Source: Mizuhopecten yessoensis (taxonomy: Eukaryota). From it: a stretch of DNA of 64,000 nt. Positions within the stretch are counted from its first letter, which is position 1. Every line of letters starts with the position of its first letter. Below the pieces are notes generated by a model that did not search any database, was not told where the DNA came from, and saw only the letters and a program-made list of their open reading frames with translations. The stretch lies in the NCBI RefSeq assembly GCF_002113885.1, contig NW_018408465.1, forward strand, positions 3,309,898 to 3,373,897, given 5' to 3'. A program made the translations under genes and the position numbers. This document shows positions 48,376-62,600 of this stretch, one piece after another.

Positions 48376-49617
48376 AACTAGAACACTGACAGGTCAGTAA
48401 GGGCCCCGTCTTGTGGCAATATATCCCCCATAATCACCAAGAAGCAACCTGTCCATATACATGTAGCTGAGCTTGACGTTTGACATTTGGGCTTCAAAAA
48501 GAATCGCAAGGAAGCAAAATATACATTTTGCTGGGCTAACAGAAATGTAAATACCGGTGCAATTATCTTTTGTTAGCTTTGATTTGTTTTATTTCACCTT
48601 ATTTACCTCCTCCATCAAGAGCAAGGGTCAAAGTCAGAGATCCACATTGTCTTCGACCTTTGGACCCAAAAGACCTTGACCATTAACCCAGTGACCCTGA
48701 TCTTTGGTCAGTTGACTTATTCTTTAATTCCGACCAACTTTGCTTCTTAATATCATAACAAAATGTTCATCAGTGAAAAATACAAAACTTGACCTTGACT
48801 CTTTGGACCCTGTAACCTGGATCAGTTGACTCTGTGTTAAATTCTGAACAACAATGATTCATAATGTCATAACAAAATGTTCATCAGGGAAAAGGTACAA
48901 AATTTAACCTTTACCTTTGTCCCAGTGACCTTGACCTTTGGTCAATTGACTCCTTGTTTAATTCTGAGCAACATTGCTTCAAAGTGTCATAGCGAAATGT
49001 TCACCAGTGAAAAGATACAAAATTTAACCTTGACCTTTGACCCAATGACCTTGACCTTTCATCAGTTGACTCCTTGTTTAATTCTGATCAACTTTGCTTC
49101 ATCATGTCATAACAAAATGTTCATCAGTGTAAAGATGTAAAATTTGACCTTGACCTTTGAATCTAATTACCTTGACCTTTGACCTCTACTTTTTATCTCA
49201 GTGTGTCTCTTTGTTTAATTCCGAACAACTTTGCTTCATAATGTCATAGCGAAATGTTCACCACTGAATAGCTACAAAATTTGACCTTGACCCCTGACCC
49301 GAAGACCTTGAACTTTGGTCAGTTGACTCATTGTTTAATTCTGATCAACTTTGCTTCATAATGTCATAACAAAATGTTCATCAGTGAAAAGATGTAAAAT
49401 TTGACCTTGACCTTTGAACCTTATGACCTTGACGTTTGACCTTGACTTTTTACCTCAATGTGTATTTTTGTGAACTGAACATCTTGACCAAGTTTCATGT
49501 ACATAGGTCAATAAATACCAAAGTTATCAGCCAGGAACAAAATTTGTGGACGGACAGACAGACAGACAGACAGAGTGATTACTATAGGGCACCCGTATCT
49601 CCGATACGGGGCCCTAA
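48376..49617 (-). mobile_element. Non-autonomous Helentron-associated element (HINE), second family
   Basis: The minus strand begins tagggccccgtatcggagatacgggtgccc (hairpin), followed by (gtct)n(gtcc) and ~120-bp internal repeats rich in tgaccttgacctttg. It ends gacggggccc, the palindrome actgac-ctgtcagt and ctagtt. Confidence 0.85.
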
Positions 49618-50177: not shown

Positions 50178-50535
50178 TTCTACTAACATTTGTTTTCAAC
50201 TGAATTGTGGCTAAATCAGACATTTATATCACAATAGTTGACTGGATCTAATGACAACGTCACCATGAAATCATCAATATTTACAGTGAATACAGAATCT
50301 ACTAACATTTGTTTTAAACTGAATTGTGGCTAAAACAAATATTTATATCACAATATTTGACTGGATCTAATGACAACGTCACCATGAAATCATCAATATT
50401 TACAGTGAATACAGAATCTACTAACATTTGTTTTAAACTGAATTGTGGCTAACACAGACATCTATATCACAATAATTGACTGGATCTAACGACAACGTCA
50501 CCATGAAATCATCAATATTTACAGTCAATACAGTA
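50178..50535. repeat. 119-bp tandem triplication in the NAT10 3' UTR, starting a few nt after the stop
   Basis: tactaacatttg recurs at 50181, 50300 and 50419. Confidence 0.93.
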
Positions 50536-56600: not shown

Positions 56601-59600
56601 TACGCAATGTAGGACGGAACTATTTTTTAGGACCTCACTCCAGAATGACTAGAGAGGATACCTGTAAGTAATTATCACCGCTAATATATTGATGTGTACA
56701 GAAAAGTGTTACCGGTCCTAACTGCAGGCTTACTTGAGTAGATTAGCTGTAAGTCCGAAAGACACACCCAGGTAATCCAGTTTTTCAGGTTTTCTCTCAC
56801 TCAATTTTAGCAACAGTGGTGGCAGGTTTTTCTTAGGTTTAATTCTTTCTTCCAATAAATTCACATCCTGTCAAACACATGGATAGTTCATTTGAAACAA
56901 GTGTATGGCAGAAAAATTCAAGACAACCTTTTGAAAAGAATCGGTCGATGTTTCCAATACAGATCCTTTCATTTTCAAATTCTTTTATTCATTGATGGCT
57001 TTTGTATTCAGAAACTTCAAAATCATTCAGACTTGTTATTGCTGAATTCAATTTTGAATAATACAATGTGACACATTGTCCAAATTCAGTATCAAATACC
57101 AAGATTTCATATCATAACACTAACATAAGTATGAACAATTTAATATAACTTTATCTAATACTGAACAACCTTGTAATTAGGGACAAGATCAGGTCATTAT
57201 TTCAGAACTAGATACATGAAATGAATTCCAGAGAAATCAATGGTCATCTTACCTCATCACCAACAGTGGAGATCTCCGTTTCTGTTTCCTCCACAGTTTC
57301 CAACAGGTTTGGGATGTTCCCCTCGTAGTACTTCTCCAGTAAAGTCATAGCCCGGGTACCATACCCCATCTACGCACACAAGTATTCAAGAATATTGAAT
57401 CATGTCAACTAATAAACTTAACATAAGAAAAAGATATGAAACACCCATTTTTAAATGGAGAGAACAATATGTAAGTTCACTTGCAGCAATTGTATTTACG
57501 GTTATTGGGCTAGGATCTCAACTGTTTTCATGTGCCCCAGGGATTAAGTCCTCAGGTGTTGGGCCAGATTTCAGAGCCAATCTTGGTAACATGATTGTCT
57601 TTGCCTATTTCTATGTAAAACAGAACTATCATTTAAATTAAACTGATCTAAACTTAACCCTGGGAAATCTGACATAAACATACTCTTTGGTAATCTGAAA
57701 TAAACCTACCCCTTGGTAATCTGACATAACCTTTCCCCTAGGTAATCTGATATAAACCTATCCCTAGGTAATCTGATATAAACCTACCCCTTGGTAATCT
57801 GATATAAACCTACCCCTTGGTAATCTGATATAAACGTACCCCCTGGTAATCTGATATAATTTACCTCTTCAATGGTAATCTGACATAAACTTATCCCTAG
57901 GTAATCTGATATAAACCTACCCCTTGGTAATCTGATATAAACCTACCCCTTGGTAATCTGATATAAACCTACCCCTTGGTAATCTGATATAAACTTACCC
58001 CTTGGTAATCTGGATGAGTAGCTATCCTTACAATTCTCCCACCAGACAATCCGGGGAAGTCATGGTCTTGGAACTGTGAAAGAAATTTACTTGATTAAAG
58101 TCAATGTAGAGAATATGTACATAATTAGAGAGATAAAAGTAAAGACTGTAACTTGCATGGATATTACAAACATGATAAACTGTCTCACAGAAAGTATGGT
58201 CTTTATAAATATATACAAGTTATTGTAAACTGTAAAATTTCTAAACTGAGTTCAAATTTAGTGTTGAATTTGCCCTCTGAATGTTTAAAAACTACTGTCC
58301 TTATTATCTATGATTCATAATGTTTTGCATCTGATTTAATTGGCCTTCTATTGCAAGGGCCAAAAGGCCAAATCTACAACAAGGGCAAAATATGGTCTTG
58401 ATATACGTGACAAAATATAAAGATACATGCATTTTTCTTCATTTTTCTCTATTAAACAAATATATGTGATTGTCAAAATCAAATCATGATCATATTCACA
58501 TTGGCTTTGCTAGAATCATTTCAGGCCAGTTAAAAATGGGATGTGTAAGTCACACGATCAAGAATTCGCTTGTCTTAAAGATTCTACAAAACTGACCATC
58601 GAGGTTGTTACAGTTTCAATGCCGAGAAGAAAAAAAGGTTCATTGAGTGGTTACCAAGTCTCCACCAGTGTTTAAGCCAGTCTACAGAGTGATTACCATT
58701 AGCACAAAAACCTAGGAGGCAATTCACAGGTCAGAAGTTTGTGAGAGGAGTATTGTCAATGTACAAAAGGTAATCAACAGTAGGCACTACTCATTTAGAT
58801 TAACAGCAAGCAATCTTGTGTTTGAAATTTCATAATGAACTATTCCAACCTTTGAATTGGAAGAGTTTAAATGCGTCTTCAGGGGTAAATGAGTTAAATG
58901 TTGACAGGCTATCCATGGAATGATGTGCTTACCTGTTGAGAGACCGTCCATGGAATTTTGTGCTTACCTGTTGGGAGACCGTCCATGGAATGATGTGCTT
59001 ACCTGTTGAGAGACCGTCCATGGAATGAGATCTCCGGAGGCCCTCTCACCACGAGACAAGCTGTTCATGATGGTCGCTTTGGATATCTCTCCCTCCAGAC
59101 TTACCTGTCAGTAAACAAAAACAACAATATAGAAAATACAAATAATATATCATAATCTACTTGAGTGAACTAAATAATCTTAATATCATAATCTACTTGA
59201 GTAAACTTAAAGCAAATGTATCTTTGTATCATTTATCAGGTAAACTGTAGGGTGAAAATTATTCATTGGTTGGTATCAAAGGGATCCTTGGGGAAATTCT
59301 CTTGTTTGATAAGATACTGTCTATAAATTTACTGATGTGCTGGATCAGCTTACCTGTACCACACAGAGGACCTCAGGAAGGGACGACTGGTCGGGGTTGA
59401 TCCCACCCAGAAGAGCAAATATATGGTGAGCTGGGGCATCTGACAGCAGCTGTAGGTCATTGGGAGTGTTCTGTAACAAGGCTTCATCTTATAATCTACT
59501 ATCCACAAATCACTACAAATCAAGCTCCACAAATCATCATAATCAAACTCCACAAATAATTATCAACCCCAAATCATTATAGATCAAATTACACAAATCA

Positions 59601-62600
59601 CTATAAATCAAAGTTCAGAAAGCATTACCTATCTAATTAGTGTAAGGACTGCTGCATCAATTCGGCAAAGATTTAGAACTTTCTTTTAGATAATTAGCTT
59701 ACTATTAATACTTTGTAAAATATAGACTTCATTCAGGCAAACTTCTAGAACTGACCATATAATTTGGGTGACACAGAAGGCCATGAACTATACAACGTAC
59801 CTTGTAATGGGAGGAGACATAGAGGGCCATGATCCTGTGGAGGTAGGCTTCCTGACTGAACTATACAACATACCTTGTAATGGGCGGAGACATAGAGGGA
59901 CATGAGCCTGTGGAGGTAGGTCTCCAGACGGAACTATACAACTTACCTTGGAATGGGACAGGCAAACTTCTAGAACTGACCATATAATCTGGGTGACACA
60001 GAAGGCCATGAACTATACAACATACCTTGTAATGGGCGGAGACATAGAGGGACATGATCCGGTGGAGGTAGGCCTCCTGACTGAACTATACAACTTACAT
60101 TGTAATGGGAGGAGACATAGGGGGACATGATCCTGTGGAGAAAGGCCTCCAGACTGAACTATACAACTTGCCTTGTAATGGGAGGAGACATAAAGGGGCA
60201 TGATCCTGTGGAGGTAGCCCTCCAGACTGAACTATACAACTTTCCTTGTAATGGGAGGAGACCTAGAGGGACATGATCCTGTGAGGTAGGCCTCCAGACT
60301 GCACTATACAACTTACCTTGTCATGGGAGGAGACATAGAGGGCCATGATCCTGTGGAGGTAGGTCTCCAGACTGAACTATACAACGTACCTTGTAATGGG
60401 AGGAGAAATAGAGGGACATGATCCTGTGAAGGTAGCCCTCCAGACTGAACTATACCACTTACCTTGTAATGAGAGGAGACATAGAGGGACATGATCCTGA
60501 GGCGGTAGGCCTCCAGACTGAACTATACCACTTACCTTGTAATGAGAGGAGACATAGAGGGACATGCTCCTGTGGAGGAAGGCCTCCAGACTGACCTATA
60601 CAACTTACCTTGTAAGGGGAGGAGACATAGAGGGACATGATCATGTGGAGGTAGGTCTCCAGACGGAACTATACAACTTACCTTGGAATGGGACAGGCAA
60701 ACTTCTAGAACTGACCATATAATTTGGGTGACACAGAAGGGCATGAACTATACAACGTACCTTCTAATGGGAGGAGACATAGATGGACATGATCCTGTGG
60801 AGGTAGGCCTCCTAACTGAACTATACAACATACCTTGTAATGGGCGGAGACATAGAGGGACATGCTCCTGTGGAGGTAGGCCTCCTAACTGAACTATACA
60901 ACATACCTTGTAATGGGTGGAGACATAGAGGTACATGATCCTGTGGAGGTAGGTCTCCAGACTGAACTATACACCTTGCCGTGTAATGGGAGGAGACATA
61001 GGGGGACATGATCCTGTGGAGTAAGGCCTCCAGACTGAACTATACAACTTACCTTGGAATGGGACAGGCAAACTTCTAGAACTGACAATATAATTTGGGT
61101 GACACAGAAGGGCATGAACTATACAACGTACCTTGTAATGGGAGGAGAAATAGAGGGACATGATCCTGTGCAGGTAGGGCTTCAGACTCAACTATACAAC
61201 ATACCTTGTAATGGGTGGAGACATAGAGGGACATGATCATGTGGAGGTAGGTCTCCAGACGGAACTATACAACTTACCTTGGAATGGGACAGGCAAACTT
61301 CTAGAACTGACCATATAATTTGGGTGACATAGAAGGCCATGAACTATACAACATACCTTGTAATGGGTGGAGACATAGAGGTACATGATCCTGTGGAGGT
61401 AGGCTTCCTGACTGAACTATACAACGTACCTTCTAATGGGAGGAGACATAGAGGGACATGATCCTGTGGAGGAAGGCTTCTGATGCCTTGTGGTAGGAGA
61501 ACAAGGTATCTCTGTTAACATAATAGAGGTCACATGTCTCTGGTAGAGGACAGCCTGACGTTATTCGTGGAACAGACGTCGCATCCAAACACAAAAGGTC
61601 ATTTAACCATTTCTCCACCGGGTCACCGTTGGCGTACCTGATGGACTCATTCAGTACAACCTCATGTAAAACACGACCTGTGGAAATAGAGTGTATGGTA
61701 AAATACAATCTGGAAAAAACAATTATAACTGGGCCTTGTCAAGGTCAGTCAGCATAATAACTGTCAAATAAAACACATTTCCTAATAAAATCTCTTCATT
61801 TTTTGAACATTGATCAAATGTGTTTTTTTCACACTTATCACTAACACAAGAGGCCCAATGGGCCTGTATCGCTCACCTGTTATTCATCTCACATCTAGAT
61901 CTGTGACCTTCAAGTATCATCACTCCTTACATTATGGGTCTAAGTTGGAAGATTATATTACATAGAACTCTACACATTAAGAGTCTTTCTTGGACAATTT
62001 AAACTGATTTTCACCATCTGACCTCCAAAGTTGGTTTAGGTCACTCATTCAAATCCCACACTTTGTACCAAATCATAACATGAAGCTACTGGTCAAACAT
62101 CATGACCTCTTGGTGATTCTGAAGAAGTCATTTAAAGTAGAAAGTTGTCACCGGACGGACACTGCACCATGGCATAAGCTCACTTGGCCTTTCAGGTTAA
62201 CAATATAAATCATCTCTATGAAAGGGAGACAATCTCAGAACATGGGCAATATTACATGTCCAAAACTCACTATCATATAACACACTTGTTTTGGACAATC
62301 ATCCCAAATGTTGACATTTCTTTCTCTTCATTAAATCAGAATTGTGTGACGACTTTCTCTGACTTTCCCTCAGATTTGGATGTGGATAAACAAAATTTCA
62401 GTAAGAAAAAGCACAATTTATCTTTTATCATAATTTTTATATAGTTATTTTGTCCAACCATGGATCATGTGAAAGAAAAAATGTCATTGTAAAACTGATA
62501 AAATCGTTGTATAAACTCAAACGACATCATAGTCAACACTACCTGATGCTGAGGAGACGGAATCTGTCTTGGAGGTCATGTTGGCAGTTCTCTGTAGTTC

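What the first reader, a model, noticed from the sequence alone, without database searches (positions are those of the whole stretch)
61430..61486. In-frame TAG in an essential gene, matching a variant in the adjacent exon-copy array
Seen: the exon reads ...TCC CAT TAG AAG|gtacgt. The next exon begins NTPNDLQ, and most array copies read CAT TAC AAG. The same TAG variant with the same gtacgt donor is in the intronic copy at 60745 (cttctaatgg, 60761-60770). Established: NAT10/Kre33 has a conserved SHYKN(S/T)PNDLQ and is essential, and a stop here would remove the acetyltransferase domain. Inference: the last ~57 coding nt lie inside the repeat unit, so unequal crossover or gene conversion can import neutral intronic mutations into the exon and create a null allele. 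Alternatively it is an assembly or polishing error from mis-phased repeat reads. Readthrough or A-to-I editing (UAG to Trp) is possible but unsupported.
Basis: partly seen in the sequence, partly recalled or inferred. Interest (0 to 1): 0.8.

Follow-up and report, generated by a model that had tools for sequence, protein, structure and literature searches.

The report
Stop codon in scallop NAT10 exon
The reference sequence of this scallop really shows a stop codon where every relative of the essential NAT10 gene has tyrosine, but the codon lies in an exon end that an unstable, badly under-assembled repeat array also copies, so it is more likely an assembly mistake or rare allele than a working stop.

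Summary
**Observation confirmed.** The minus-strand NAT10 exon 61677-61430 ends CAT TAG AAG|gtacgt. TAG-AAG sits exactly where human NAT10 has residues 538-539. All 73 relatives that reach the site have Tyr.

**The array.** The last ~52-57 exon bases plus the donor form a 73-bp unit, present 23 times. Sixteen copies read TAC and two read TAG: the exon copy and the one at 60766-60764.

**RNA.** Raw RNA reads from two studies splice 61430 to 59470 (14 and 11 reads). No other letter is listed at the codon. All six polymorphisms are synonymous, on both sides of the stop. The codon is only 3 bases from the joint in every read covering it, and the tool appears to drop mismatches near piece ends. So "no row" is weak evidence for TAG.

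**DNA.** The exon's 31-mer occurs once in the 988-Mb assembly but at about 19-26 times single-copy depth in two animals' DNA. The array is collapsed.

**Other checks.** I found no second NAT10, no tRNA-Tyr with a CTA anticodon and no downstream RNA structure.

**Verdict (odds).**
- Mis-threaded assembly: 0.45
- TAG real and expressed, read through as Tyr: 0.2
- Rare null allele made by array exchange: 0.15

The letters of the junction reads would settle it. The scan has noted similar exon-edge arrays elsewhere in this genome.

The parts
61430..61677 (-). NAT10 exon (end of the helicase domain and the linker before the GNAT domain). It translates to RVLHEV...LYVSSH*K.
   Evidence: Searches give the sequence and translation. 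One search aligns it to human NAT10 458-537 (E 1.5e-36). RNA reads link it to 62543 upstream and 59470 downstream.
61433..61435 (-). In-frame TAG at the position of the invariant Tyr (human residue 538).
   Evidence: Relatives have Y at this position in 73 of 73 cases. TAC would give Tyr.
61424..61429 (-). The 5' splice site gtacgt that transcripts actually use.
   Evidence: One search shows the joint 59470->61430, skipping 1959 bases with CT..AC ends (GT..AG on the minus strand), in 14 and 11 reads from two RNA studies.
59784..61486 (-). Exon-junction ('mirage') minisatellite. The 73-bp unit is the exon end plus the donor plus about 20 nt of intron. There is the exon copy and 22 intronic copies, with 225- and 371-bp higher-order periods.
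   Evidence: The family occurs only at this locus in the assembly.
60764..60766 (-). The second TAG, in an intronic copy with the same gtacgt donor. It shares 39 identical bases around the codon with the exon copy.
   Evidence: It is the only single-substitution relative of the exon 46-mer in the window.
61442..61472 (-). An exon-type 31-mer that the whole assembly holds once but DNA reads hold at about 19-26 times single-copy depth. It marks a collapsed array.
   Evidence: One search finds 1 match in 987.6 Mb. One search gives a contig depth of 440 against 23.4 (X5), and 327.5 against 12.5 for the overlapping 46-mer (X1).
59354..59470 (-). Next NAT10 exon (NTPNDLQ...VLCVVQ), the start of the GNAT acetyltransferase domain. 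It is intact.
   Evidence: One search aligns it to human 540-578. One search matches PF13718. One search shows it spliced to 61430 and to 59104.
62543..62575 (-). 3' end of the upstream exon, joined to 61677 in transcripts.
   Evidence: The loose-end consensus of 14 and 21 reads is located in the window.
59070..59104 (-). Start of the following exon (VSLEGEISKAT), joined to 59354 in transcripts.
   Evidence: The loose-end consensus of 24 and 5 reads is located in the window.

Best explanation
The working gene most likely reads TAC (Tyr), and the TAG was placed in the exon copy by the short-read assembler. The last ~52-57 bases of this NAT10 exon are the first unit of an exon-junction minisatellite. 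That array is much larger and more uniform in real DNA than in the assembly. The exon copy shares an identical stretch of at least 39 bases (61472-61434) with some 20 or more array units, and a TAG variant of the unit exists in the array. An assembler leaving the unique exon through that shared stretch can exit on the wrong, low-coverage branch and so write an intronic TAG variant into the exon. Shown here: the array, the TAG variant, the collapse of the array, the splicing at the first donor, and the intact gene on both sides. Inferred: the mis-threading itself.
For: (1) The assembly has 82,659 contigs, and its likely source reads date from 2016. (2) The 31-mer 61442-61472 occurs once in 987.6 Mb, and the repeat family occurs only at this locus. 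Yet Logan contigs of two animals' DNA hold it at depth 440 against 23.4 (X5), and the overlapping 46-mer, with one difference from the exon copy, at 327.5 against 12.5 (X1). So about 19-26 near-identical units are missing from the assembly. (3) A TAG unit really is in the array pool. (4) Everything else says the gene works. There is a single locus. The downstream GNAT and tRNA-binding exons are intact. All 6 polymorphisms in RNA reads are synonymous, four upstream and two downstream of the TAG (chance about 2e-4). Read depth is ordinary at about 25-30x, with no sign of mRNA decay. (5) Nothing that would decode a UAG was found. None of 18 tRNA-Tyr-like genes has a CTA anticodon, the downstream RNA shows no structure (z = 0.12), and relatives have TAT rather than a stop. 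(6) Such arrays are known to be 'aberrantly assembled' in drafts (PMC3087553).
Against: The direct test did not show TAC. In 14 and 11 junction-spanning reads plus 3 loose-end reads from two RNA studies, no other letter is listed at 61433, and no letters lie between the two sides of the joint. My explanation needs that test to be blind at this base. I infer this from two unlisted mismatches of X5 contig 5, which can only lie near the end of its laid piece. I have not shown it. In addition, TAG lies within 31 bases of the spacer TTCAGTCAGGAAGCC, which follows a gtacgt donor only at the exon-proximal unit. That fits a correctly assembled array edge.
Confidence: 0.45

Rival explanations
1. The TAG is real, common and expressed. 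The scallop's NAT10 mRNA carries UAG at the Tyr codon, and full-length protein is made by readthrough, most plausibly by near-cognate tRNA-Tyr (G-psi-A), which would restore the original residue.
For: Taken at face value, one search shows spliced mRNA from two independent 2026 studies with no letter other than the reference at 61433-61435. Those animals carry other haplotypes than the reference (61628 G>A in 22/26 and 25/25 reads; 61598 and 61604 are mixed). Downstream exons are intact, polymorphism is synonymous only, and mRNA level is normal. In yeast, Tyr makes up 92% of the residues inserted at UAG (PMC4150775).
Against: A stop fixed inside an essential, universally conserved domain has a very low prior. 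Relatives have Tyr codons, so the stop is not conserved. The context CAU UAG AAG AAC is not a known leaky one (my knowledge), and the downstream RNA shows no structure. No tRNA-Tyr with a CTA anticodon was found. The codon is 3 bases from the joint in all covering reads, so the missing row is weak evidence.
Confidence: 0.2
2. The TAG is a real but rare, heterozygous null allele in the sequenced animal. Unequal crossover or gene conversion between the exon copy and a TAG-bearing array unit made it.
For: The exon end is a unit of the array, and a TAG unit with the same donor exists. Such arrays are length-unstable through unequal exchange (PMC3087553). The contigs break at different places in X1 and X5, which suggests the array differs between animals. 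Bivalves are known for a high load of recessive lethals (my knowledge).
Against: One search lists no TAC in the two other RNA data sets, under the same blind-spot caveat. Both unique flanks of the array in X1 are single contigs without bubbles at full depth (12.5 and 12.8), so no second haplotype is visible there. No DNA read linking the unique exon to the codon could be inspected.
Confidence: 0.15
3. The stop is removed at the RNA level. Either A-to-I editing turns UAG into UIG (Trp), or an alternative in-frame donor 18 nt upstream (TAT|GTCTCC) skips the stretch VSSH*K.
For: None. The alternative donor is only a sequence possibility seen.
Against: One search lists no T>C row at 61434, although the same caveat about closeness to the joint applies. 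Only one joint, 59470->61430, reaches 3 reads in either run.
Confidence: 0.03
4. This locus is a dispensable or decaying copy, and another NAT10 gene does the work.
For: The assembly is fragmented, so a copy could be missing.
Against: The exon protein and PF13718, PF13725 and PF05127 hit only this locus. No reads at 90% likeness or more showed a second sequence type. The gene is otherwise intact, with only synonymous variation.
Confidence: 0.03

Closest known systems
'Mirage' minisatellites: tandem duplications of exon-intron boundaries (amphioxus Adh3 and globin genes; PMC3087553)
   Same: The units span an exon end and its splice site. The authentic first copy is the one spliced. The arrays are unstable and poorly assembled in draft genomes. 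This scan has noted many such arrays in this scallop genome.
   Different: In this case one circulating unit variant turns a conserved codon into a stop, and the reference sequence carries that variant in the exon copy itself.
In-frame stops in gene models of draft assemblies (the kind RefSeq labels 'LOW QUALITY PROTEIN'; my knowledge)
   Same: A single in-frame stop in an otherwise intact, conserved, expressed gene of a short-read assembly.
   Different: The stop is a base substitution that matches a variant of an adjacent repeat. That gives a specific route for either a computational or a biological origin.
Programmed stop-codon readthrough inside coding regions (Drosophila kelch and headcase; tobacco mosaic virus UAG read by tRNA-Tyr; my knowledge, plus PMC4150775 for Tyr at UAG)
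   Same: There is an internal UAG followed by a long conserved reading frame, and Tyr is the residue expected from near-cognate decoding.
   Different: The stop is not conserved in relatives. There is no leaky context or stimulatory structure. There is no protein or ribosome evidence.

Membership tests
NAT10/Kre33 RNA cytidine acetyltransferase | Helicase, GNAT and tRNA-binding domains in order | tested here: met
   PF05127, PF13718 and PF13725 match exon by exon in collinear order on one strand of one locus. Searches align the two exons to human, yeast and Chaetomium NAT10/Kre33.
NAT10/Kre33 RNA cytidine acetyltransferase | Uninterrupted reading frame with the invariant SHYK motif | tested here: not met
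   The assembly reads SH*K. Relatives have Y in 73 of 73 cases. Whether the animals themselves read TAG is unresolved.
Mirage (exon-junction) minisatellite | Tandem units that each contain an exon end and its splice site | tested here: met
   There are 23 units of about 73 bp, each with ...CATTA[C/G]AAG|GTxxGT.
Mirage (exon-junction) minisatellite | Normal splicing at the authentic copy | tested here: met
   The only joint seen is 61430->59470, in 14 and 11 reads from two studies. Read depth inside the array is about zero.
Mirage (exon-junction) minisatellite | Length instability or polymorphism | tested here: inconclusive
   Read-derived copy number (about 19-26 extra units) disagrees with the assembly, and contig break points differ between X1 and X5. 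No reads spanning the array were available.
Programmed stop-codon readthrough | Stop codon conserved among related species | tested here: not met
   The nearest relatives read TAT. All 73 relatives have Tyr.
Programmed stop-codon readthrough | Leaky context or stimulatory downstream structure | tested here: not met
   The downstream exon folds no better than shuffled sequence (z = 0.12). The context UAG-A is not a known leaky one (my knowledge). The spliced context was not folded, because the joined step was left out.
Programmed stop-codon readthrough | Stop present in mature mRNA, with protein continuing past it | tested here: inconclusive
   One search lists no other letter at the codon, but the site lies 3 bases from the joint. 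Protein evidence cannot be tested with these tools.
A-to-I recoding of a stop | G read at the middle base of the stop in RNA but not in DNA | tested here: inconclusive
   One search has no T>C row at 61434, under the same caveat about closeness to the joint.

The most novel reading that the evidence does not exclude
Yesso scallops carry, at high frequency or fixed, an in-frame UAG in place of the invariant Tyr538-equivalent codon of the essential NAT10 gene. Exchange with the gene's own exon-junction minisatellite brought it into the exon. The animals live because near-cognate tRNA-Tyr reads the UAG and restores the original residue. That would be a self-correcting nonsense codon.
Probability: 0.2. 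Interest if true: 0.85.

Novelty: new member of a known kind. Interest (0 to 1): 0.4.

Why it matters
If the TAG is an assembly error, the lesson is practical. Exon ends that are part of junction minisatellites are places where short-read assemblies can write intronic variants into coding sequence, and this genome has many such arrays. If it is a real rare allele, it is a concrete case of a minisatellite feeding null alleles into an essential gene at far above the point-mutation rate. If it is real and common, an essential animal gene would depend on reading through an internal UAG as Tyr. That would be a striking natural case of nonsense suppression and would be directly testable.

Tried and rejected
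- **Second NAT10 copy.** None was found with the exon protein or with three Pfam families over the whole assembly.
- **A '1 TAG' flag in a tRNA_bind_2 exon.** It is the intron's acceptor tAG, not a coding stop.
- **Amber-suppressor tRNA-Tyr.** A looser pattern found 18 Tyr-like sites, 8 of them exact with a GTA anticodon and none with CTA. Other tRNA families were not scanned.
- **Downstream stimulatory structure.** None was found.
- **Same-species sequences from other sources.** The word search returned only relatives at 93% identity or less. A metagenome scan with a 44-base exon-anchored pattern ending TAS found nothing. Records of this genome appear to be withheld.
- **DNA contigs at the codon.** Logan contigs break at 61443, or are collapsed consensus pieces, so they cannot link the codon to the unique exon.
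- **Literature.** I found no paper on scallop NAT10 or on readthrough in molluscs.
- The big representative-protein search was not used, because the protein's identity was never in doubt. No complex or structure prediction was needed.

Full report
**What is there**

On the minus strand, an exon runs from 61677 to 61430 and ends TCC TCC CAT TAG AAG|gtacgt, with TAG at 61435-61433. The next exon starts at 59470 with NTPNDLQ. The upstream piece aligns to human NAT10 residues 458-537 (E 1.5e-36), and the next exon aligns to residues 540-578. TAG-AAG therefore occupies exactly residues 538-539.

Of 113 relatives found with the exon, 73 reach this position. All 73 have Tyr there: 72 read YK and one reads YR. 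The two nearest relatives whose DNA I could read have CAT TAT AAG|gtaa, short introns of about 400 and 140 bp, and no array. The stop and the array are therefore derived in this lineage. Earlier notes of this scan name the animal as the Yesso scallop. The assembly size (987,588,634 bases, 82,659 contigs) fits what I remember of that genome.

**The array**

The last ~52-57 exon bases, the donor and about 20 intron bases form a 73-bp unit. It repeats over 59784-61477, with 225- and 371-bp higher orders. I count 23 copies including the exon copy. At the Tyr codon they read:
- 16 TAC;
- 4 TCC, in a variant unit;
- 1 GAC;
- 2 TAG: the exon copy, and the copy at 60766-60764, which also has the gtacgt donor.

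The repeat family occurs nowhere else in the assembly. This is a 'mirage', a minisatellite built from an exon-intron boundary. Mirages are known from amphioxus and are described as unstable and aberrantly assembled in drafts (PMC3087553). Three further arrays touch NAT10 exon edges in this window, and the scan has noted many in this genome.

**The gene is otherwise healthy**

- There is only one NAT10 locus in the assembly.
- The GNAT and tRNA-binding exons downstream of the stop are intact. The one TAG flagged there is the intron's acceptor.
- Raw RNA reads from two independent 2026 studies (X21, X24) join 62543|61677, 61430|59470 and 59354|59104. The 61430|59470 joint is seen in 14 and 11 reads. 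No other joint reaches three reads, so the first donor is the one used and none of the 22 decoy donors is.
- Read depth over the exons is about 25-30x from roughly 12 million reads. That is ordinary for this gene and shows no obvious decay. This is my inference.
- The RNA animals differ from the reference at six places: four upstream and two downstream of the stop. All six are third-position synonymous changes (chance about 2e-4). Both halves of the gene are under purifying selection.

**The critical base**

One search lists no other letter at 61433 (TAC) or 61434 (TGG) in either RNA run, and no letters between the two sides of the joint. At face value this means the mRNA carries UAG in animals that have haplotypes different from the reference.

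I do not take it at face value, for two reasons.
- First, every read that covers the codon ends its aligned piece at 61430, so the base is the fourth letter of the piece.
- Second, the tool lists differences only 'away from ends', and that margin seems to be measured on the laid piece. Contig 5 of X5 has two mismatches that appear in no row. They cannot lie in its right-hand margin, because the overlapping contig 7 is identical to the reference there. They must therefore lie near the left end of the laid piece, which is far from the end of the contig itself.

The nearest listed read difference to a piece end is 11 bases away (59360). I put the chance that the test is blind at this base at about 0.3. 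The missing row then favours a real TAG by only about three to one.

**DNA**

The Logan contigs cannot link the codon to the unique exon. The unique contig stops at 61443 in both animals. They do show that the assembly of the array is wrong in scale.
- The 31-mer 61442-61472 occurs once in 987.6 Mb.
- The same 31-mer stands at depth 440 against 23.4 for the flank in X5.
- A 46-base contig over 61427-61472, with one difference from the exon copy, stands at 327.5 against 12.5 in X1.

So about 19-26 units that share the exon copy's sequence for at least 31 bases, and in X1 for 46 bases bar one difference, are missing from the assembly. An assembler leaving the unique exon through such a shared stretch has to choose a branch. 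A low-coverage TAG branch belonging to an intronic unit looks like the proper single-copy continuation.

Against this, TAG lies within 31 bases of the spacer TTCAGTCAGGAAGCC. That spacer follows a gtacgt donor only at the exon-proximal unit, which is what a correctly assembled array edge would look like.

**Ways to decode a real UAG**

- Among 18 tRNA-Tyr-like genes, 8 are exact matches with a GTA anticodon and none has CTA.
- The downstream exon folds no better than shuffled sequence.
- The stop is not conserved in relatives.
- Near-cognate tRNA-Tyr is the main reader of UAG in yeast, at 92% Tyr (PMC4150775). Any readthrough product would therefore carry the right residue. Nothing here suggests the efficiency an essential gene would need.

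**Weighing**

A stop fixed in the middle of an essential, universally conserved enzyme is very improbable beforehand. A mis-threaded or rare-allele stop inside a collapsed minisatellite is ordinary. The one test that could overturn this is weak at the decisive base. My odds are:
- assembly mis-threading, 0.45;
- real, common and expressed TAG that is read through, 0.20;
- real rare null allele made by exchange with the array, 0.15;
- RNA-level rescue, 0.03;
- a second NAT10 copy, 0.03;
- the rest unassigned.

**Limits**

- I had one run search and one read-laying run.
- Same-species sequences were not returned by the protein or contig tools.

Noticed in passing
window 57639-58012: A 26-bp unit x 14.3 (TAATCTGATATAAACCTACCCCTTGG on the + strand) overlaps the 3' end of the NAT10 exon matched by PF13718 at about 57996-58082. 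It is another array seeded on an exon end in the same gene.
   Followed up: partly
window 58912-59028: A 35-bp unit x 3.3 whose minus-strand reading holds CAACAG|GTAAGC. It overlaps the 3' end of the exon at about 58997-59104 and is a third donor-side array in NAT10.
   Followed up: partly
window 59502-59612: A degenerate 24-bp unit x 5, just upstream (in transcript sense) of the acceptor at 59471.
   Followed up: no
L006:3530-3660: In the nearest relative, the homologous intron ends with two copies of a roughly 60-bp unit that runs up to the acceptor. This is a small repeat on the acceptor side of the same intron, where this scallop has its repeat on the donor side.
   Followed up: no
window 59360: The RNA variant C>T appears in 7 of 12 reads with the first mate on + and in 0 of 13 with the first mate on - in X21. 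That strand imbalance is odd for a plain allele in what looks like an unstranded library.
   Followed up: no
window 59814-59915 and 60549-60635: High-depth consensus contigs (268.8 in X5, 167.7 in X1) match the assembled units only with 4-5 differences. X1 and X5 contigs also break at different points, which suggests the array differs between animals and from the assembly.
   Followed up: partly
window 48673-49471 and 50179-50533: Larger tandem repeats with periods of 120, 257 and 119 bp lie downstream of the NAT10 exons examined. I did not look at them.
   Followed up: no
L007:3680-3760: A stretch that looks tRNA-like (...GGTTCGAGCCCC...) sits in the relative's intron after the next exon. It may be a tRNA-derived element.
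   Followed up: no
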